DNA of 63,944 bases, filler included, from Octopus bimaculoides (Eukaryota): NCBI RefSeq assembly GCF_001194135.2. It is 10 parts of 10 records of this genome, joined end to end, with 100 filler letters (N's around TTAATTAATTAA, not from the genome) between each part and the next. Parts side by side here need not be neighbours in the genome. Positions count along the whole stretch, not along the records: positions 1 to 9,635 come from NC_068983.1; 9 more parts are not named here. The stretch is one strand, 5' to 3'. The notes beneath the pieces were generated by a model. That model had not been told where the DNA came from and made no database searches. It saw nothing but the letters and a program-made list of their open reading frames with translations. Shown piece by piece: positions 1-8,862 of this stretch; position 1 is the stretch's first letter; each line of letters starts with the position of its first letter. Position numbers and translations under genes: made by a program.

Positions 1-49
1 TATTAATGTAGAAATATGGTATCGTAGCTACTAACAGTTGAGGGTTGCA

Positions 50-118
50 TAGTCTAGACGGCGTTTTTAGATTTCATTATTCTCTTTAACCCGGGCAACG
101 CCGGGTGTTTCTGCTAGT
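50..118 (+). mobile_element. Helitron-type 3' terminus (GC hairpin + CTAG-T)
   Basis: CCCGGGCAACGCCGGG hairpin at 90-105, then CTAG at 114-117 and T. Near-identical to 18176-18243, which lies just downstream of a Helitron helicase C-terminus. Confidence 0.75.
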
Positions 119-345
119 TTAAATATATATGAGCATGTCTAGATATGTAACTATATGCATGAGAATACATACATAGAAATATACAAATCTGCACATACAT
201 ACATACATACATACATACATACATACATACATACATGCATACCTTGTTGTTGATGTTGAAATTCCAATGAAGGAGCCTTGGATCTAGGTTAGAAACCGGT
301 TCTTTCTCTATTGGCAAGAAATCTCGAAATAACTGAATAATGACA
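119..345 (+). repeat. Interspersed repeat module with internal (ATAC)n; second copy at 63784-63944
   Basis: AAATATATATGAGCATGTCTAGATATG...(ATAC)n...GTTGAAATTCCAATGAAGGAGCCTTGGATCTAGGTTAGAAACCGGTTCTT recurs with few changes at the far end of the window. Confidence 0.8.
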
Positions 346-443
346 TACATACATACATAAAATACATACATACATACATAAAATACATACATACGTACAT
401 ACATACATACATGCATGCATGCATGCATGCATGCATACATACA

Positions 444-476
<33 letters not shown>

Positions 477-496
477 GCATGCATATATGCATGCAT

Positions 497-1179
497 AAAA
501 ATACATCGACAGATGACAAATGTAAGTTGTGCAACACTAAAACTGAAGGCATCAACTACGTTGTGGCCAACTGCGAGAAAATGTCTTCTACAATAGATAT
601 TTATCTTCTTATGAGGCATGATGCAGTGGTCCGAACAATCTGAAAGAGAAGTAGAAAAAAAAGAAATTACCGTCTGACAAAGTTGACTGTATTATGACCG
701 ATAGGACCAATGGGTGGAATTTAAAAATGAAAACAGCCTCCAACTCAAAACACAACCAGCCAAATATTGTGTGGGGCCACAAGAAAAAAATATGCTTTAT
801 TATGGAAATCGGCTGCTTTCTGGACACTAATGTGGTTAGGAAAATACAAAGGAAAGAAAAAATCTATGGGCTCTTGATAAGGAGGTTGCAAATCTGCTAC
901 CCAAAGTAGTTTTTTTTTATGTCTATTGTTATTTGAGCAGCATGAGACGTACCAACCGACCTGGAGCAAATTATGGCTAATCTTGAATTCTTGGGGAGAG
1001 AATGCAACTCATTAATTTATACGCGACAAATGATCCCGATATCTGGGACAATAAAAAAATCTGCAAAACTTTCTAAAGATTTAAAGGATTATTAACAAGG
1101 CCAGATGCTTTCCTTCAGATATTTGCTACCAAGCAGGTAGCCAGTTAAAATTTACTCTAAATTAAAAAGAGGAAAAGAA
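497..1179 (+). mobile_element. RLE-type non-LTR retrotransposon (R4/Dong-like) 3' fragment, copy A, decayed
   Basis: Translates across frameshifts to a CCHC knuckle (DDKCKLCNTKTEGINYVVANC...RHDAVVRTI) and an RLE region (NIVWGHKKKICFIMEIGC, KEKIYGLLIRRLQICYP, ISGTIKK). Confidence 0.75.
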
Positions 1180-1199
1180 CACACACACACGCACGCACG

Positions 1200-1251
<52 letters not shown>

Positions 1252-1293
1252 TACATACATACATACGTACATACGTACATACATACATACATA

Positions 1294-1750
1294 GCTAAAG
1301 TATTATATAATGAGATCTGTAGACAGGATAATCCTATGGAAAGAAGTATAAGAAGTTATAATGATGTGTAGGGCATAAGCACACATAATAGGAAAGAATC
1401 TTGATGGAATGTCCTTGTCAGATCATGACTTCAATAAAATACAAGCAAAATAGCCGATACGTAACGATCTAAGCAGAAGAAAAACACTATGTACAATAGT
1501 TAAATCAGTTACCCTGCAGTTTTCAGCATAACGTCATAGATTAGTGGAAAAGATAACATTATAGCGAATTAATAAGAATATGCAGTTACCCAGTCTAGAC
1601 TGTAGATTGAGATTTTTACCAATAATTATTAATACACTTGGTTACGTGAGTAGCTACGTCAGAACCAATCTTGAGAAGCCGGGATTCACAAAACTGGAAA
1701 AAACACGTCAATGCGAAAGATTATAGCTGCAAGCTATCAAAGGTACCATC
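1294..1750 (+). mobile_element. RLE-type LINE fragment, copy B, flanked on both sides by (ATAC)n
   Basis: Frameshifted AKVLYNEICRQDNP...THNRKES*WNVLVRS...EKDNI...LQLQAIKGT, collinear with copy C and with the 43574 copy (THNNNEYRWNVLVR). Confidence 0.65.
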
Positions 1751-1811
1751 ATACATACATACATACATACATACATACATACATACATACATACATACAT
1801 ACGTACTTACA

Positions 1812-2259
1812 TACTGGTGGAATATTCAGGCTGGATATTGTTGTTTGGGACAGAGGGGCGATGGTATGCACCATCATAGAAGTCAGCTGCCCTGCAGATA
1901 TAAATAACTCTTTGAAAATCGAAGAAAAAGAGGATATCTGTGGACAATTGCTTCGAAACCTCCAGCTTCTATATCCAGACTATGAATTCATATTCATACG
2001 AATAATGATTGGAGCACTAGGTTTTGTTAGTAAATGCTTAAAGGAGAATCTGGATAAACTGGGATTTTCAGAAAGAGAAATCGATCGGCCAATTCGTACA
2101 TTACAAGTGCAATCTGTGAGTGGAACAGTAAAAATATGCAAGACTTTTCTCAAGTTCCAAATGTGAATTTGTCTGTGAGCCTTGTATCTTTGTTGGAAGC
2201 CATCTCCCCCTTCAGTGGAAGATTTATAATAATTAAAATATAGAAGAGACGTACATACA
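1812..2259 (+). mobile_element. RLE-type LINE 5'-truncated 3' end, copy C (endonuclease domain + 3' UTR)
   Basis: YWWNI, then RLDIVVWDRGAMVCTIIEVSCPADIN...KIEEKEDICGQLLRNLQ...IGALG...GTVKICKTFLKFQM* (PD..D/E..K-type RLE core). Stop at 2164-2166; 3' UTR ends in GTACATACAA. Confidence 0.85.
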
Positions 2260-2875
2260 AGACAGTCGATGTTAGCTGCTGCATACTTAGTGTAAGAGAC
2301 TATTTATCGAATAGTCTCCCAAGTGAAATATGCGACTGCTCCCGCCTTAATATCACAATTACCCGCCTTGTTAAATAATTGGTTATTCTTTTAATTGCAT
2401 TCATTGAGGAAACTATTATCTCAAGAATGTGGTGGTGTTTGTCAAGATCTGGGATTCACCTTGCGTTGAGCTGCTGCAGACGGCGTGGCTGTACACAGCA
2501 GCATCAACCGAACCGGACTTCCAGAAGTTTAACATCTGATAAATGCATAAACATTCGTGTCGATATGAAAACTTGTATGTGTTCTTATTAAACTCTACGC
2601 AAGCAATAACACTCACACTTGCATGCATGTGCACATACATGCGTACAAACATAAATGCTTATGTGCCTACATATGTACATGCATACATACATACACGCAT
2701 GCATACATCTGTGTATACCTACTTACATTCGTGCATATATGCAAAACAAAACAAAAAACCCCGTTGATGTTGTCTAAATTTTAATGAAAGTGCCTAGTTT
2801 CTGGGTTAGACATCGGCTTTTCCTACATTGGTGAGAAATTCGAAAAATAAAACAAGAAGAAAATATATATATATG

Positions 2876-3031
2876 TTTGTGTTTATGTCCCCGTAACTTA
2901 GCGGTTCGGCAAAAGAGACCGATAGAATAAGTACTAGGCTTCTAAAGAATAAGTCCTGGTGTCGATTTGCTCGACTAAAGGCCGTGCTCCAGCATGGCCA
3001 CAGTCAAAAGACTGAAACAAGTAAAAGAGTA
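2876..3031 (+). mobile_element. SINE family B (3' part)
   Basis: GTAACTTAGCGGTTCGGCAAAAGAGACCGATAGAATAAGTACTAGG...GCTCCAGCATGGCC.CAGTCAA..GACTGAAACAAGTAAAAGAG. Reverse-complement copies at 16963, 35585, 43065 and 44608. Confidence 0.75.
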
Positions 3032-3039
3032 CATCCACA

Positions 3040-4270
3040 GATCTTGTCAGTGTCAACGGTGACGCTGGTATAATCTGTTACGGGAAGAGATTGAGAAAGA
3101 AGCATAAAGCCTGTCCAGACGGCTTTTGTGTGCTATACCATGACATTCAAACAAGACTTAATGAATCTATTGGAAATATTAACATATCACGTCTATGCTC
3201 ATCAACAATAATAATGATTTCAAATTTTGGCACAAGGTCAGCAATTTCTGGGATGGGACAAGTCGATTACATCGACCCCAGTGCTCAACTAGTACTTATT
3301 TTATCGATTCTAAAGGGATAAAAGGCAAAGTCAACCTCGGCGGAATTTGAACTCAGAACATAAAAGACAGGCGAAATACCGCTAAGAATTTTGCCCGCGT
3401 GCTAACGATTCTGCCAACTCGTCGCCTCGTCAACAGTGATAATAATGCCATCACGGAATTATAGGAAGAACTCTTGAATAGGTCCTCTGAGTGTTACAAC
3501 TATTACACACAAACCAAGGAAAGCTGAAATAGTCTACTTGATAGAAATTTTGAGGAGAATGTGTCTGCAGAAAGTTATGCATGGGTATACATCCCACAAC
3601 CTAGAGAATGATAAAAGAAAACATTGACAGGAGTGGGGTAGCCTCTCCTGATCGTGTGATAGACACATCCCGTCTCACTGAGAAGAACACGCTTTCGATA
3701 CCCAAGAGCATCAAATAGCTACTAAATTTCTGACCAACAAGGGAGATAAGGAACTCCTCTAAACTTTCACGTTGTGATAGAACATGTCGACTGTACCATA
3801 CTGGGGTGGGAAATATCCCCACATCATCAGCAGTTGTCCAAAAAATATCCGTAAGCTACTACTTACACATAAGATATGACATTGTTGCTAAAACCATTTA
3901 GAATACTATTTGCAAAAAGGATTTTTTCTGACGGAAAAACAAAAGCATACCAGACCCAGAATATATTCACGTCTTTAAAAATAAGGATTACTGGTAGAAT
4001 ATTCCAATAAAGATAGGTTGCAAAAATTGCTGATTGTTATAGAGGCTGGCTACCCGGCAGATGTAAAACTGATGGAAAAGAGAACTTTAATGAGAAAATG
4101 TTAATCTTATAGCCAAGCTGTATACCAGTGGTGCATATAGCTGTATAATAAGAGATTCGCATAAAAACTTAGAAAACATGCTCAAAGAAAGAATAAAGCT
4201 TGCTAATTCGCCTCCTCCTAATAAAATTGATTAGTGGTACAGTGAAGACTTATAAAACATTCCAAGAATT
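3040..4270 (+). mobile_element. RLE-type LINE fragment, copy D (post-RT region to RLE), interrupted by a SINE
   Basis: Frameshifted RSIKPVQTAF, DTQEHQIATKFLTNK, SYYLHIRYDIVAKTI, IEAGYPADV, LISGTVKTYKTF, in the same order as copies A, C and E. Confidence 0.65.
3221..3427 (-). mobile_element. tRNA-derived SINE family A
   Basis: Reverse complement gives an A-box-like TTGGCAGAATCG, B box GAGTTCAAATTCC and core GACTTTGCCTTTTATCCC...ATCGATAAAATAAGTACTAG, matching 56314-56547. Confidence 0.85.
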
Positions 4271-4675: not shown

Positions 4676-4873
4676 GTATGTATGTATGCATGTACCTATG
4701 TATGTAAATTAGCCAGCTCGCCTGTCCAGCGGGGTGGCGACATTAGAAAGCTAAAACAATGCTAAGCGCATTGTGATCAGCAATGTATAACATCCGATAG
4801 CCTGGTCGATACTGTGATACATACGTAAGTACATGTATATACGTACGTATGTATGTATGTATGTATGTATGTA

Positions 4874-4919
<46 letters not shown>

Positions 4920-7584
4920 TGTATGTATGTATGTATGTATGCATGCATGCATGCATGCATGCATGCATGTATGTATGAGTGAATAAAGGACTCGAGTATC
5001 TGTAGTGCACAGGCATACATGTTCCACGAATCGAATTTCGAATGTAAAAACTGTCTTCTACACACGCACACACACACGCACACACACACACACACATACA
5101 TACTTTCTCTCTCTCTTTCTAAAATTCTCTCGCTGACTTTCTCTTTTTATCCCGCGTCTATGTACGTGTTCGTTTGTGTATGCGTGTGTGTGTGCGTGCA
5201 TGTGCGTGCGTAAATATATATTCACATAAATACACTTACACATATATGTGTTTTGAAACAGTTTTATTGTGTCTGTGACGAGAAACTCAGCCACAGGTGG
5301 GATGCGTAATTTGTAAATTCTGTTCCTTAGAGGTTTCCATAGCTGTAATGAAGCCCAAACACTTGCTCTCTCAGACATTCACATAGAGAAAGAAGGAAAA
5401 GAAGAAAAAAACAGAGAGAGAAGGGGAGGATCCGTTATCGCTCCCCTGTCACAACAGCCAGCACTCTCGGCAATATCTTATCTGGGATTCCGTTCTCTGG
5501 TTTACTGCTGAATACCAATTTAGCGAACGGAAACTGTTTGACCAATTGGCAGAATATTTGGGTGAGTAGAGTAATATTTTTTGGTGTTTCAATAAACAAC
5601 TGTCTTGTTTCTTTTTTCACTTATGTTACCCTGGTTAGTAACTATATGCTTCACTAGTAGCATTATCATTATATCCCTTCGTCCAGCACGACATTAGACC
5701 GTATCGCACACCATCACAAAAATTCCATTACATTACTGTCACACCACACACGAGCCACAGTAATACACTTCTTCATATTGTTATTACTATTAACACATCC
5801 ACCAGCACACTTTACCCACCACAACACTCCACGCTACGCCTCATTTCAATTACCACAATCACCACAAACACAAACACAACATCATTCCGTTTCGTCGTTA
5901 CATCACACTTCACTATATCAGATCGCTCCGTTTCGCTGCATAACTACACCGCATCACATGCATATATACCATTCTACTTATCCAGAAATCCAGGTGAAAA
6001 AAAAAAGAGAAGAAAAAAAAAAACACTGGAAAAAAAAAAGTCATACAGATAAAACATAAGAGTATCAGAAAAATAAAGGAGTCGCAGGGAAATTTCAAGA
6101 TATAATTGATTTAATGCTGTTTTTTGTTGCTGGTTTATTGTTCTATTTAAAATATTGTATGAATCGTATTTTTTTTCACATACGTGTAATACAATTATGT
6201 TGTCATTGCGTATAAGTCATGTAGTGTCAGTTTATTAACTCAAAATATTATTTGTTTAATTACATCAACTATTATTTTTTGCTACGCTAATACGAAAAAT
6301 TTAACATTTATCAGGTGACTTTTTTCCTACCCAAAAGTGTGACATTTTTTTTTTCTATGACTTTATTTCCGTTCACCTTATGCGGCACACACTACATGAT
6401 GTCTCTATTAAACTGCACCGCATTCAAAGGAGACTACATCGACCTGCCTTATTGGTCGGGACGTCTCGACAGAATTACATTGAAGGGAGACAACGGCGTA
6501 CTTTGTCAATTAGTTTTTGCAATTAAGCAAATAGCGTTTTCTTTTTCTTTTCTTTTTTGTTTGCATCTGTAAAAGACTAGTAACCTTAGTATCTCAGTTC
6601 TAATGTGTATGATAATGTTGATGGCAAGGAAGGGAATAAGAAAATTTTCAAAATTGATCTAAAGGCCACAGTTTTTTAGGGGGTGTGATGTAGACTCCAG
6701 TATAACGACTCCAGTAATGAGTATTTTATTTTATTGATTTTGATGATTTCTATATAGGCATAAAGCTATACATTTAAGGAGCAAATTACAATTGATTCAG
6801 TTTAAACCAAAACCTGACTAAGGGGTTTTTTCCTGTATTTTTTTATCGATCCCAAAAGGGAGAAGAACGAAGTTGACCCCATTGTAAAGGGACGTAATTA
6901 AATCAATTCTGCCAAAATAATTTTATCATGTCTGCCTCAAAGGTCCGAATTTATAATAGAGCGATATATTCAGTAGATTGCTTATATTTATTTTATCACC
7001 TTTAAAAAGGGCGATAGATTAGGAGCATGAAATAGATTTTCTCTTTGTCCATTGAATGTATATAACTGTTGTGAAATTATGGGGGTTGCATTATAAAACA
7101 CATGGTCGAATGTTCAAATCTTATTACAGGTTGTGCCTGGGAGCAAGGTATATAACTCTACTTGATAAATTAATGAAATTAAAAATTGTCGCTCTCCCTC
7201 TCCTCCCCTTTCTTTGCCTTTCTCCCTCCCTCCGTCCTATTCTGTTTCTTTCTATCCTCCCTTTGTCACTCTCCCTCCTTCCTTTGTCACTCTTCCTCCT
7301 CCCTTTGTCTCTCTCCCTCCTCCTTTCCCTCCTTTTCCCTCTCTAAATTCCACGATGCTAATCCGTAGAGTTGACTGCAAAAGTAAAAAGGAAAAGAAAA
7401 ATTCAATTTCATTTGTATTTGTTGAATGAAACTCAAATTAAACATGGATAAAATAAATCTCGTTTTTAATATTTTCCATTTCAGAAATTCTCCTTCTGGT
7501 GTTGTGACCAAATTAATTATTGTGTGTGAAAGCCAAATCTTCAAGTGAAAGGACAATTGATTGAAGAAGTTTCTTAAAGAAATC

Positions 7585-8862
7585 ATGAAGACGAATATCA
7601 ACATTGATGTTTTCCAGTGTGGAATATGCCAAAAATACTTTTCCGACAGCAATAGTTTAAAGGTTCACATGGAAGTGCACCCGGTCAAGAAACTGTACTT
7701 TTGTGATGTATGTGGCATATCCTGTGTTGAAGAATATCTCTTGAATAATCACATGAAAATTCACACAGGAGAAAGACCGTATATTTGTGATATATGTGGT
7801 AAAGATTTTGTGAAAAAATCTCAATTGAAGAAACATTCAGAAATACACAGCAGTGACAGCCTCTTTCACTGTGATATTTGTGGCAAGAATTTTGTCCATG
7901 CATCTTCTTTAAAGAAGCACATACGAGTGCACACTGGAGAGAAACCGTTCCAGTGTAATGAGTGTGGGAAAGAATTTGTGCAGAATTGTCATTTGAAACA
8001 GCACCAGAGACTGCATACTGGTGAGAAACCATTTCATTGTGAATTTTGTGGCAAAGACTTTGTACGAGGTTCTGATTTTAAGATCCATACTCGAAGACAC
8101 ACTGGAGAAAAACCATTCATTTGTAATATATGTGGGAAAGATTTTGTTGATGGATCTTCATTGAGAAGTCACATACGAATACACACCGGGGAGAGACCAT
8201 ATCATTGTGAGATATGTGGTAAGGATTTTGTAATTTCCTCTTCATTAAAGAAACATATAAAAACTCATACTGGAGAGAAATTTCACTATTGTAAAATATG
8301 CAGAAAGAAATTCGTTCAAGCATATTCTTTGAAAATCCACATGAAAATCCACACTGGAGAAAGTGCATTTAAATGTGAAGTGTGTGGGAATGATTTTCAG
8401 GAAAGTTATGATTTGAAAATGCATATGAAAATTCACACTGGTGAGAAAACTTTCCACTGCGATACTTGTGGTAAGGACTTCTTGCACGAGTTCTCATATA
8501 AGAGCCACATGAAAAAACACGAAGGAGAAAAACCAGTTGAATGTGAGATGCGTGAAAGTGATTTTTACCAAATGTCCAGCTTAGGGAATCATATGAGTAA
8601 ATATACGAAGACTAAGATTTTCCATTGTGAAATATGTAGGGACGATTTTATGGAAGAATCTAGCTTGGCAAAGCACATAAAGATCCATACAGATGAAAAG
8701 CCATTTCAATGTAATTTATGTGGAAATGACTGTGTTGAAGCATCTATTTTGAAAATTCATATCCAAGGCCACTTGGAAGATAAACCTCTAATTTGTAAAA
8801 CATGTGGAGATGAGTTCCTCTTTGAATGTGACTTAGAAAAACATGTTGAAATGCATGTATGA
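7585..8862 (+). CDS. Multi-C2H2 zinc finger protein, 15 fingers (14 intact) in a single coding exon
   Basis: Open frame with repeated C-x2-C-x12-H-x3-H and TGEKP-type linkers. First in-frame ATG at 7585 (the track's TTG at 7561 is not a normal eukaryotic start). Pyrimidine-rich acceptor TTTTCCATTTCAG ends at 7484. Confidence 0.93.
   Translation: MKTNINIDVFQCGICQKYFSDSNSLKVHMEVHPVKKLYFCDVCGISCVEEYLLNNHMKIHTGERPYICDICGKDFVKKSQLKKHSEIHSSDSLFHCDICGKNFVHASSLKKHIRVHTGEKPFQCNECGKEFVQNCHLKQHQRLHTGEKPFHCEFCGKDFVRGSDFKIHTRRHTGEKPFICNICGKDFVDGSSLRSHIRIHTGERPYHCEICGKDFVISSSLKKHIKTHTGEKFHYCKICRKKFVQAYSLKIHMKIHTGESAFKCEVCGNDFQESYDLKMHMKIHTGEKTFHCDTCGKDFLHEFSYKSHMKKHEGEKPVECEMRESDFYQMSSLGNHMSKYTKTKIFHCEICRDDFMEESSLAKHIKIHTDEKPFQCNLCGNDCVEASILKIHIQGHLEDKPLICKTCGDEFLFECDLEKHVEMHV

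What the first reader, a model, noticed from the sequence alone, without database searches (positions are those of the whole stretch)
497..4270. Candidate (ATAC)n-targeting site-specific RLE retrotransposon: four copies stacked in 4 kb
Seen: four diverged fragments of one RLE-endonuclease LINE family (A 497-1179, B 1294-1750, C 1812-2259, D 3040-4270), all on the same strand. A, B and C each start immediately after an (ATAC)n/(ATGC)n tract, at different truncation points. C ends in TACATACAA, and A ends before (AC)n(ATAC)n. Established: RLE elements are often target-specific, and R4-clade Dong elements insert into (TAA)n. Inference: this family cuts (ATAC)n, which would explain head-to-tail stacking and a link to the genome's most abundant microsatellite. 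Sequence flanking a 5'-truncated end is target DNA, not element tail, so those junctions are the informative ones. Caveats: (ATAC)n is very common here, and D's 5' flank is a SINE.
Basis: partly seen in the sequence, partly recalled or inferred. Interest (0 to 1): 0.75.

Follow-up and report, generated by a model that had tools for sequence, protein, structure and literature searches.

The report
Octopus jumping gene targeting (ACAT)n microsatellites
This stretch of Octopus bimaculoides DNA holds at least seven dead, head-to-tail copies of one retrotransposon family that sits between runs of the repeat ACAT here and in relatives elsewhere, so the family almost certainly inserts into that repeat, a new target for a known kind of site-specific element.

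Summary
The window is Octopus bimaculoides chr CM046603.1. Plus-strand fragments A, B, C and D are decayed, 5'-truncated copies of one LINE family with RT, a CCHC knuckle and a C-terminal restriction-like endonuclease (RLE). I found three more pieces (F, G, H), so the stack is larger than reported. Only D's 5' part (3040-3555) could not be confirmed.

A, B, C and F each begin within a few bases of a sense-strand (ACAT)n array. The chance of that per random position is about 0.0013. The copies share only 43-56% nucleotide identity, so they are separate insertions.

Independent loci support targeting:
- A full-length 1133-aa element (L003) has (CATA)n on both sides.
- Another species (L011) carries three stacked copies separated by (TACA)n.
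- O. vulgaris copies also begin at such arrays.
- A sister family sits in (ACTT)n stacks (L004).
- A more distant, end-to-end alignable family sits in (TAA)n, the classical Dong target (L012).

The best reading is an R4/Dong-like RLE LINE that integrates into (ACAT)n by target-primed reverse transcription. Cleavage specificity, genome-wide statistics, empty sites and clade phylogeny were not tested. Verdict: a new target variant of a known kind.

The parts
118..192 (+). H: the last ~75 nt (3'UTR end) of family copy E. The body of E lies upstream of the window (L002 170-383), separated by a ~2.2 kb insertion.
   Evidence: Collinear with the contiguous E-like copy in O. vulgaris (L008 10211-10590 matches L002 167-383 and 2609-2771 at 87-88%). 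Sequences read.
193..242 (+). (ACAT)12 array between H/E and F.
   Evidence: TRF.
243..342 (+). F: an extremely 5'-truncated copy (last codons plus 3'UTR) with (ACAT)n on both sides.
   Evidence: Aligns with the 3'UTR core 'GGAGCYTTGKATCT..GTTAGAAACC..TCTC' of seven other copies. An F-like copy follows an E-like copy in L008.
343..497 (+). Compound (ACAT)n/(GCAT)n array. It is the 3' flank of F and the 5' flank of A.
   Evidence: TRF; sequence.
498..1178 (+). A: a 5'-truncated pseudogene copy carrying the CCHC knuckle, the RLE domain and the 3'UTR. It ends '...GAAAAGAAC'.
   Evidence: HMM hits at 494-1056 (profile 884-1077, E 3e-24); tblastn; translation.
1179..1293 (+). (AC)n/(GCAC)n then (ACAT)n array. 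It is the 3' flank of A and the 5' flank of B.
   Evidence: TRF.
1294..1749 (+). B: a heavily decayed copy, 5'-truncated in 'RHDxVAK' and also lacking its last ~11 codons and its 3'UTR. It runs directly into (CATA)16.
   Evidence: HMM hits at 1219-1536 and 1484-1750 (to profile position 1076); tblastn at 1574-1750; translation.
1750..1814 (+). (CATA)16 array between B and C.
   Evidence: TRF.
1815..2259 (+). C: a 5'-truncated copy (from 'EYWWN') and the best preserved RLE domain in the window. It has a 151-aa ORF, but RPD is mutated to RLD. The 3'UTR ends '...AGAAGAGAC' followed by a short tail, GTACATACAA.
   Evidence: HMM hit at 1822-2160 (E 4e-34). 75% nucleotide identity to an O. vulgaris copy (L007). 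ORF listed.
2634..2756 (+). Degenerate (ACAT)n-like array plus an A-rich run. It is the 5' flank of G.
   Evidence: TRF rows at 2634-2708; sequence.
2757..2855 (+). G: a second 3'UTR-only copy, homologous to F. Its 3' flank is (AT)n rather than (ACAT)n.
   Evidence: Alignments.
3556..4270 (+). D: an older decayed copy reaching further 5' (profile 822-968 detected at 3556-4015; the rest to about 4270 is too decayed to score). A SINE lies at about 3204-3427. No array was recognised at either end.
   Evidence: HMM; tblastn; SINE matches.

Best explanation
The window carries a graveyard stack of an RLE-type non-LTR retrotransposon family. The family is R4/Dong-like. [quoted passage not shown]

Proposed mechanism (inferred by analogy with R2 and Dong, not shown here):
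1. The protein binds the (ACAT)n·(ATGT)n duplex.
2. The RLE nicks the (ATGT)n strand.
3. The freed 3' end pairs with the (AUAC)n run that follows the element's conserved '...GAAC' 3' terminus in the RNA. That end then primes reverse transcription (TPRT).
4. 5' joining is imprecise, so most copies are 5'-truncated.

Consequences that are seen directly:
- Every insertion splits an array and keeps (ACAT)n on both sides.
- All copies lie in one orientation relative to the array strand.
- Each insertion leaves arrays for the next one, so copies pile up head to tail.

Shown here: the architecture, the RLE fold, the array junctions, recurrence in other loci and species, and sister families with other repeat units. 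Inferred: the binding, the nicked strand, tail annealing, and which domain reads the target.
For: Architecture:
- RVT_1, a CCHC knuckle and an (R/K)PD motif are present in 16 of 17 full-length relatives. None has an APE domain or an N-terminal C2H2 finger.
- An AlphaFold model of the C-terminal domain (pLDDT 88.8) best matches the RLE region of R2Tg, R2Pm and R2Bm (E 9e-7, TM 0.71).
- By sequence, the RT-to-CCHC region matches R2 proteins (E 1e-26).

5' junctions at arrays:
- Window copies A, B, C and F.
- Copy E in L002, directly after (ATAC)13.
- O. vulgaris L007, after (CATC)n(CATA)21, and L008, after (CCAT)n(ACAT)3.
- Background probability 0.0013 per position.

Full-length copies with arrays on both sides:
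- L003: 5' (CATA)n and 3' '...ACGAAC|(ATAC)n'.
- L011 copy 2, between (TACA)33 and (TACA)19.

Conserved 3' junction:
- GAAC|ATAC in L003 and L006.
- GAAC|ACAC in A.
- GAGAC|GTACATACAA in C.
- CAGAAG|ATAC in E0.
- GAGAAC|ACACATACATACA in Argonauta.

Stacks recur: L011 has three copies in (TACA)n, and L004 has three copies in (ACTT)n.

Copies in the window stack share only 43-56% nucleotide identity with each other. C is 75% identical, and E 93% identical, to O. vulgaris copies elsewhere. They are therefore separate insertions.

Orientation: every ACAT-family copy lies on the strand that reads (ACAT)n.

Related families:
- P0142/P0325 aligns end to end with P0166 (31% identity over 1117 aa, E 8e-161). 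It has a (TAA)n 5' flank (L012).
- A Dong-like copy in O. vulgaris follows a long (TAA)n run (L007 minus strand).

Literature:
- R4/Dong elements insert into rDNA or microsatellites, and into (TAA)n in most insects, molluscs and cnidarians. [quoted passage not shown]
- Most RLE LINEs are target-specific (PMC4640811).
Against: - No empty (pre-insertion) site was seen, and no genome-wide junction count could be made. Only about 12 octopod copies in 5 loci were examined, several of them in one stack, so they are not independent.
- Almost every array 5' of a copy is also the 3' flank of another element. 'Target' and 'tail' therefore cannot be separated at those junctions.
- Some copies lack a clean array. 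D has none at either end. G and E have (AT)n at the 3' side. L009 sits in compound TA/CA/TG repeats. L001 has no 3' array. The Argonauta main copy has a SINE at its 5' side.
- B's 3' truncation is not what simple TPRT predicts.
- Clade placement is indirect because no R4, Dong, HERO or NeSL reference sequences were available.
- Pfam does not detect the N-terminal Myb-like motif.
- No HDV-like 5' ribozyme was found with Rfam.
Confidence: 0.8

Rival explanations
1. Tail only, no targeting. The (ACAT)n arrays are 3' tails carried or generated by these elements, or by other LINEs and SINEs. Copies lie next to arrays only because each brings its own tail. Adjacency of one copy's 5' end to the previous copy's tail reflects clustering in TE-rich, recombination-prone DNA.
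For: Every family copy with an intact 3' end is followed by the repeat. Nearly all 5'-flanking arrays are also the 3' flank of another element. In L001 the array 5' of the RLE copy directly follows an unrelated APE-type LINE and may be that LINE's tail. Microsatellite tails are well known for RTE elements, including one in octopus (PMC9115989).
Against: Random insertion would put a 5' end within 5 bp of an array with p of about 0.0013, yet 6 of 12 copies do so. Copies of different subfamilies and ages (43-56% identity) lie exactly at array ends. Outermost 5' junctions also abut arrays with no family 3' end upstream: L007, L008 and L011 copy 1. The same pattern holds with a different, family-specific unit in sister families (ACTT, TAA).
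Confidence: 0.09
2. Single-event concatemers. The stacks arise in one integration event, either by end-to-end template jumping of the RT from one RNA to the tail of another, or by reverse transcription of read-through transcripts that span several elements. Stacking then says nothing about repeated targeting.
For: The composite 'E - short array - F' recurs as one unit at a non-orthologous O. vulgaris locus with a different 5' truncation point (L008 10211-10590 against L002, 87-88% identity). So at least one stack member pair was copied together, probably from a read-through RNA. End-to-end template jumping is an established property of the R2 RT (my own knowledge, Bibillo and Eickbush).
Against: A, B and C differ from each other far more than from copies elsewhere, which points to different ages and sources. 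Full-length single copies still have arrays on both sides (L003, L011). Both insertions of the composite themselves start at ACAT-class arrays. The model still needs an array at the outermost 5' junction.
Confidence: 0.07
3. Local rearrangement. Unequal crossing-over, replication slippage or segmental duplication between neighbouring microsatellite arrays produced the tandem arrangement from one or two original insertions.
For: Arrays are good substrates for unequal exchange. B has lost its 3' end at an array boundary, which looks like an array-mediated deletion.
Against: Stack members start at different positions of the element and share only 43-56% identity. That rules out recent duplication of one another. 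The same architecture appears independently in other loci and species (L004, L011).
Confidence: 0.03

Closest known systems
Dong (Bombyx mori) and Dong-like R4-clade LINEs, which are (TAA)n-specific
   Same: Both have a single ORF with RT, a CCHC knuckle and a C-terminal RLE. Neither has N-terminal zinc fingers, and both carry an N-terminal W..EEL...RL..W..HPE Myb/SANT-like motif. Both insert into a microsatellite, with the repeat on both sides and a fixed orientation. P0166 aligns end to end (31% identity, E 8e-161) with a (TAA)n-flanked element (L012). Octopus 'Dong-R4' LINEs are already annotated in the literature (PMC9115989, PMC13282606).
   Different: The repeat is the tetranucleotide (ACAT)n, or (ACTT)n in a nested sister family, rather than (TAA)n. 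In a rough NJ tree the (TAA)n family falls outside the whole ACAT/ACTT group. I found no description of this target in the searched literature. No 5' HDV-like ribozyme was detected, whereas Dong and R4 have one (PMC3774820).
R2 (28S rDNA-specific RLE LINE; solved structures 8GH6, 9DOU, 9NL2)
   Same: RT, CCHC and RLE lie in the same order. The RLE fold matches (TM 0.71) and the RT-to-CCHC sequence matches (E 1e-26). R2 is the mechanistic model for TPRT at a specific target.
   Different: R2 has N-terminal zinc finger(s) plus a Myb domain and targets a unique 28S site. This family has no zinc finger and targets a simple repeat. Similarity to R2 is far weaker than to the (TAA)n Dong-like family.
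Waldo (R1 clade, Drosophila), which inserts into (ACAY)n; also Mino (AC)n, Kibi (TC)n and Koshi (TTC)n
   Same: Waldo uses essentially the same microsatellite, ACAY repeats, as a safe-haven target. This rests on my own knowledge (Busseau 1998; Kojima and Fujiwara 2003, 2004) and was not checked here.
   Different: Those elements are APE-type LINEs of the R1 and Tx1 clades. Their endonuclease and domain order are unrelated, so this would be a convergent choice of target.
Microsatellite-specific HERO families (leech) and Togen ((TG)n, fish; NeSL/HERO-related)
   Same: They are RLE LINEs with microsatellite targets (PMC4640811).
   Different: They belong to different clades and use different repeat units. 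I could not test whether the present family groups with HERO rather than R4.

Membership tests
RLE-encoding non-LTR retrotransposons (R2 group in the broad sense) | Central reverse transcriptase with an F/YxDD motif in a single long ORF | tested here: met
   RVT_1 hits at E 1e-20 to 1e-37 in full-length relatives. F/YxDD is present in all 17. The window copies themselves are 5'-truncated; only D reaches the region just after the RT.
RLE-encoding non-LTR retrotransposons (R2 group in the broad sense) | CCHC knuckle followed by a C-terminal PD-(D/E)XK restriction-like endonuclease, with no APE domain | tested here: met
   CCHC is present in 17 of 17 and (R/K)PD in 16 of 17. There is no Exo_endo_phos hit. 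The model of the domain best matches the R2 RLE region and then PD-(D/E)XK endonucleases. A carries the CCHC and C carries the RLE motifs.
R4/Dong clade | RT phylogeny groups with R4, Dong and Rex6 rather than R2, NeSL, HERO or CRE | not testable with these tools
   No reference sequences were available. Indirect evidence only: an end-to-end alignment with a (TAA)n-flanked element, and published RepeatMasker-type 'Dong-R4' labels for octopus LINEs.
R4/Dong clade | No N-terminal zinc fingers, with a diverged Myb/SANT-like domain near the N-terminus (PMC7998251) | tested here: inconclusive
   There is no C2H2 pattern in the first 350 aa of 17 proteins. A W..EEL...G.M.RL..W..HPE motif is shared with the (TAA)n family. 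Pfam gives no Myb hit, and HHpred was not available.
R4/Dong clade | Site-specific insertion into rDNA or a microsatellite; Dong proper uses (TAA)n | tested here: met
   Microsatellite embedding is met. The unit is (ACAT)n, not (TAA)n, so this is not Dong proper.
R4/Dong clade | HDV-like self-cleaving ribozyme at the 5' end (PMC3774820) | tested here: inconclusive
   Rfam gives no hit at E up to 10 on the 5' ends of L003, L004 and L012. Pseudoknotted HDV-like ribozymes are easily missed by this search.
Dualen/RandI (dual-endonuclease LINEs) | Both an APE and an RLE domain in one element | tested here: not met
   The APE and RT genes upstream of the RLE fragment in L001 belong to a separate LINE. 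That LINE ends before a microsatellite, and the RLE copy starts after it. Full-length family proteins have no APE domain.

The most novel reading that the evidence does not exclude
The family may belong to a widespread animal clade of Dong-like RLE LINEs, sister to the (TAA)n Dong elements, that has retargeted among tetranucleotide microsatellites. (ACAT)n would be ancestral, with (ACTT)n in a nested lineage. The N-terminal Myb-like module would read the repeat, and the RNA's repeat tail would set the register. In octopods these elements would colonise arrays that are partly seeded by the tails of other retroposons. They would build oriented stacks, and read-through of those stacks would spawn composite non-autonomous elements such as E-array-F. 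If so, a good part of the octopus (ACAT)n landscape is structured by this targeting. The clade would also offer natural variants for studying or re-engineering how R2-like machines choose targets.
Probability: 0.45. Interest if true: 0.65.

Novelty: new variant of a known kind. Interest (0 to 1): 0.55.

Why it matters
Site-specific RLE retrotransposons such as R2 are now being developed as gene-insertion tools, and how they choose and change targets is an open question. This lineage offers closely related families that sit in three different simple repeats: (TAA)n, (ACAT)n and (ACTT)n. That is a natural experiment on target switching. It can be tested by swapping the N-terminal Myb-like region or the RNA tail between families.

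For cephalopod genomics, it links an abundant tetranucleotide microsatellite to a specific LINE family. It also explains the oriented array-element-array stacks that break short-read assemblies: contigs L003 and L006 end inside the arrays. Annotated 'Dong-R4' copies in octopus should not be assumed to use the classical (TAA)n target.

Tried and rejected
1. Dual-endonuclease idea. The first related locus (L001) showed Exo_endo_phos and RVT_1 genes upstream of the RLE fragment. I rejected this reading: the APE LINE ends before a microsatellite, the RLE copy starts after it, and full-length family proteins lack APE.
2. Pfam on the window fragments gave nothing useful. There was only a weak zf-RVT hit on A.
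3. Rfam on the 5' ends of full-length relatives found no HDV-like ribozyme. The only hits were microsatellite-driven false miRNA matches.
4. Pfam on the N-terminal 185 aa gave no Myb/SANT hit.
5. The first multiple alignment of 3' ends was too noisy to show that F and G are homologous to the family. A better-chosen set showed it.
6. I tested whether O. vulgaris L008 is the orthologous locus, which would have given empty sites for A-C. It is not. Homology is confined to the E-array-F composite.
7. The 138-bp piece at 4695-4832 between (ATGT)n arrays is not a minus-strand family copy.
9. Supplements of two papers held no usable reference sequences or consensus library, so no RT tree with R4, Dong, HERO or NeSL could be built.
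10. Literature searches for an (ACAT)n-specific non-LTR element found nothing relevant. Repbase Reports are not in the library.


Full report
**Source and layout**

A protein look-up with the intact zinc-finger ORF places the window in Octopus bimaculoides, assembly GCA_001194135.2, chromosome CM046603.1. That look-up returned locus L002, 21 kb; window position x equals L002 position x + 2416.

Tandem Repeats Finder shows a dense series of ACAT-class arrays on the + strand at 193-242, 343-497, 1179-1293 and 1750-1814. A degenerate array lies at 2634-2708. Arrays of the opposite polarity, (ATGT)n, appear only beyond 4676.

**Checking the observation**

- A has a CCHC knuckle (CKLC...H...C) followed by 'RHD' and an 'xPDIVxW...IxE...P.D.N...EK..Y' block.
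- C has the same block.
- B and D have weaker versions.

The ORF of C retrieved short homologues. A profile built from them, searched against 1.8 billion representative proteins, retrieved full-length proteins of about 1,030-1,140 aa. An HMM built from 14 such proteins places the fragments as follows:
- A at 494-1056 (profile 884-1077).
- B at about 1294-1750 (to position 1076).
- C at 1822-2160 (974-1086).
- D at 3556-4015 (822-968).

All are on the + strand, and nothing is on the - strand. A SINE copy occupies about 3204-3427, and another lies at 2873-3034.

The 5' ends of A (about 498), B (1294) and C (1812-1815) follow arrays directly and lie at three different positions of the protein. 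A ends '...GAAAAGAAC' before (AC)n(ACAT)n. C ends '...AGAAGAGAC' before GTACATACAA. B has no natural 3' end; it stops about 11 codons short of the stop codon and runs into (CATA)16.

- F (243-342) and G (2757-2855) consist of the last codons plus the 3'UTR. They align with six other family 3' ends over a conserved core, GGAGCYTTGKATCT..GTTAGAAACC..TCTC.
- H (about 118-192) is the 3' end of a copy E. The body of E lies just upstream of the window (L002 170-383), directly after (ATAC)13. That array in turn follows the 3' end of yet another copy, E0.

The locus therefore reads: E0, array, E/H, array, F, array, A, array, B, array, C, then G, then D. All are in one orientation.

**What the family is**

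- Full-length relatives have a central RVT_1 domain, a CCHC knuckle, an (R/K)PD...E...K C-terminal domain and an F/YxDD motif. They have no Exo_endo_phos domain and no N-terminal C2H2 finger.
- An apparent APE domain upstream of a family fragment in L001 belongs to a separate LINE. That LINE ends before a microsatellite.
- By sequence, the nearest solved structures are R2 proteins, from the RT through the CCHC (E 1e-26).
- An AlphaFold model of the C-terminal 176 aa (pLDDT 88.8) best matches the RLE region of R2Tg, R2Pm and R2Bm (E 9e-7, TM 0.71). The next matches are PD-(D/E)XK cap-snatching endonucleases.

**Is the repeat a target or only a tail?**

The informative data come from other loci.

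1. L003 is a 3,993-bp contig with an intact 1133-aa ORF (P0166).
   - It begins with (CATA)n, then CGCGCAGTCGCACGAG...
   - It ends ...GATTGAGAACGAAC, then (ATAC)n.
   - L006 has the same 3' junction.
   - Both contigs end inside the arrays.
2. L011 comes from another species, in the P0219 family, whose 90% cluster has 71 members. It holds three + strand copies:
   - A truncated copy preceded by (ATAC)4.
   - A full-length copy between (TACA)33 and (TACA)19.
   - Another truncated copy between short arrays.
3. O. vulgaris (GCA_951406725.2):
   - The L007 copy starts after (CATC)n(CATA)21.
   - The L008 copy starts directly after (CCAT)n(ACAT)3. It is followed by a short ACAT array and an F-like copy.
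4. Argonauta hians L010 shows a family 3' end...CAGAGAAC|ACACATACATACA.
5. Sister families:
   - L004 (P0183 cluster, 389 members) has three stacked copies. Each lies between (ACTT)n arrays and each has a conserved 3' hairpin about 60 nt from the end.
   - L001 has a truncated copy directly after (CTTA)n(CTGA)n.
   - L012 (P0325/P0142) has a (TAA)n 5' flank.
   - A Dong-like fragment on the minus strand of L007 follows a long (TAA)n run.

Over 103 kb of octopod loci, a random position lies within 5 bp downstream of a sense-strand ACAT-class array with probability 0.0013. Six of 12 family copies do so strictly, and about nine do so loosely. The copies are not all independent, because several share a stack. 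Even so, four separate loci show the effect.

Within the window stack, A, B and C share only 43-56% nucleotide identity. C is 75% identical, and E 93% identical, to O. vulgaris copies elsewhere. The stack was therefore built by separate insertions from different subfamilies, not by local duplication.

**Mechanism**

What is shown:
- Arrays lie on both sides of full-length copies.
- Arrays lie at 5'-truncation junctions.
- The 3' terminus (...GAAC) is conserved and followed by ATAC units.
- Orientation relative to the array strand is fixed.
- Stacking recurs.

What I infer, from the R2 and Dong paradigm:
- The protein recognises the (ACAT)n·(ATGT)n duplex. The N-terminal Myb-like motif, shared with the (TAA)n family and reported for R4/Dong (PMC7998251), is the likely reader.
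- The RLE nicks the (ATGT)n strand.
- The released 3' end pairs with the (AUAC)n tail of the RNA and primes reverse transcription.
- 5' joining is imprecise.

B's missing 3' end could reflect either of two things. One is priming at an internal AUAUGCA-like site; C and the O. vulgaris copy read ...AAAATATGCAAGAC exactly where B turns into (ATAC)n. The other is an array-mediated deletion. This remains unexplained.

**Rival explanations**

- A pure tail model predicts arrays only at 3' ends. It fails at the 5' junctions, including outermost junctions where no family 3' end lies upstream (L007, L008, L011 copy 1).
- A single-event concatemer or read-through model is real for one pair. The composite E-array-F recurs as a unit at a non-orthologous O. 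vulgaris locus with a different truncation point. It cannot explain the divergence among A, B and C. Both composite insertions also begin at arrays.
- Local duplication is excluded by the divergence values.

**Comparison with known elements**

- The literature establishes that most RLE LINEs are target-specific (PMC4640811).
- R4/Dong elements insert into rDNA or microsatellites. Dong uses (TAA)n in most insects, molluscs and cnidarians (PMC7998251; PMC3774820).
- 'Dong' or 'Dong-R4' LINEs are annotated in O. bimaculoides and O. vulgaris, with no target described (PMC9115989, PMC13282606).
- P0166 aligns with the (TAA)n-flanked P0142 over its whole length (31% identity, E 8e-161). That is far better than its match to R2.
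- A rough midpoint-rooted NJ tree puts the (TAA)n family outside a large group. Within that group, ACAT-associated families lie on both main branches and the ACTT family is nested. The tree has no support values, and flanks are known for only a few tips.
- I could not run an RT phylogeny with reference R4, Dong, HERO or NeSL sequences. R4-clade membership is therefore likely but untested, and HERO is not excluded.
- ACAY repeats are a known target of Waldo, an unrelated APE-type R1-clade element. This rests on my own knowledge, and the match in target would be convergence.
- I found no report of an (ACAT)n- or (ACTT)n-specific RLE LINE in the searched literature. Repbase Reports are not covered by that library.

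**Limits**

- There are no empty sites, no genome-wide statistics and no biochemistry.
- Whether (ACAT)n is the most abundant microsatellite in this genome was not tested.

**Verdict**

The finding is a new target variant of a known kind of element. It is of moderate interest to transposon biologists and to those engineering R2-like insertion systems.

Noticed in passing
window 7561-8862 (+): An intact 433-aa ORF (425 aa from the ATG at 7585) encodes a tandem array of C2H2 zinc fingers with an 84-bp period. It is preceded by a polypyrimidine 21-bp tandem repeat at 7255-7323. It looks like a member of the octopus C2H2 zinc-finger gene expansion.
   Followed up: partly
window 2873-3034 and 3204-3427: Two SINE-like repeats match many places in the O. 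vulgaris loci at 74-92% identity.
   Followed up: partly
L008 10211-10590 vs L002 167-383 + 2609-2771 (window 193-355): The composite 'E copy - short (ACAT)n - F copy' recurs as one unit at a non-orthologous O. vulgaris locus (87-88% identity) with a 60-nt longer 5' end. This suggests a read-through transcript of two stacked copies was itself retrotransposed, giving a route to composite non-autonomous elements.
   Followed up: partly
L002 384-2533 (window 1-117 is its 3' part): A block of about 2.2 kb separates the body of copy E from its 3' end (H). It contains (TGTC)n and a SINE-like end, 'CCGGGCAACGCCGGGTGTTTCTGCTAG'. (TA)n/ATGAGAAT-like sequence lies on both sides. It is probably a later insertion.
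   Followed up: no
L007 3755-4290 (- strand), O. vulgaris: A 5'-truncated classical Dong-like RLE fragment (ILWDF...KPDYVVKDK...IPVIAGALG) lies directly after a ~130-bp (TAA)n/(TGA)n run. So octopus carries both (TAA)n-type and (ACAT)n-type RLE LINEs.
   Followed up: partly
L008 10000-10075; L011 13402-14307 and 14352-14967: tRNA-derived SINE copies lie in the opposite orientation to the RLE LINEs. Their heads abut the same arrays, and in L011 their 3' ends are followed by (TATG)n. In their own sense they are embedded in (ATGT)n. A second retroposon system may therefore use, or create, the same microsatellite from the other strand.
   Followed up: no
window 4695-4832: A 138-bp unique piece is sandwiched between (GTAT)n/(AT)n and (ATGT)n(GT)n(ATGC)n arrays, which have the opposite polarity to the stack. 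It is not recognisably related to the RLE family, and its origin is unknown.
   Followed up: partly
window 1740-1750 (end of copy B): B ends about 11 codons before its stop codon, exactly where intact copies read AAAATATGCAAGAC, and continues as (ATAC)n. This could be internal priming on a repeat-like site or an array-mediated deletion. It is not explained by simple TPRT.
   Followed up: partly
L004 13026-13708 and 8350-8386: In the (ACTT)n species, another short element ending '...GTACGGCGAATAAAA' directly precedes (ACTT)n arrays twice. It is a candidate non-autonomous partner or another family using the same target.
   Followed up: no
L004 12830-12860, 14750-14780, 19190-19215; octopod 3'UTR core (alignment A4): There are conserved hairpin-like sequences 50-70 nt from the 3' end: GGTCTTGATC...GATCCGACC in the ACTT family, and GGAGC..GTTAGAAACC..CTCC in octopods. 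RNAalifold gives only a weak consensus hairpin (-5.5 kcal/mol; 7 of 12 pairs with compensatory changes). This may be the RT recognition element.
   Followed up: partly
PMC9115989 text: The published octopus 'RTE-2_OV' LINE is described as having a C-terminal endonuclease, an N-terminal zinc finger and a microsatellite starting right after the ORF. That domain order is unusual for RTE and is probably a wording slip. Its microsatellite unit is not stated, and it would be worth comparing with (ACAT)n.
   Followed up: no
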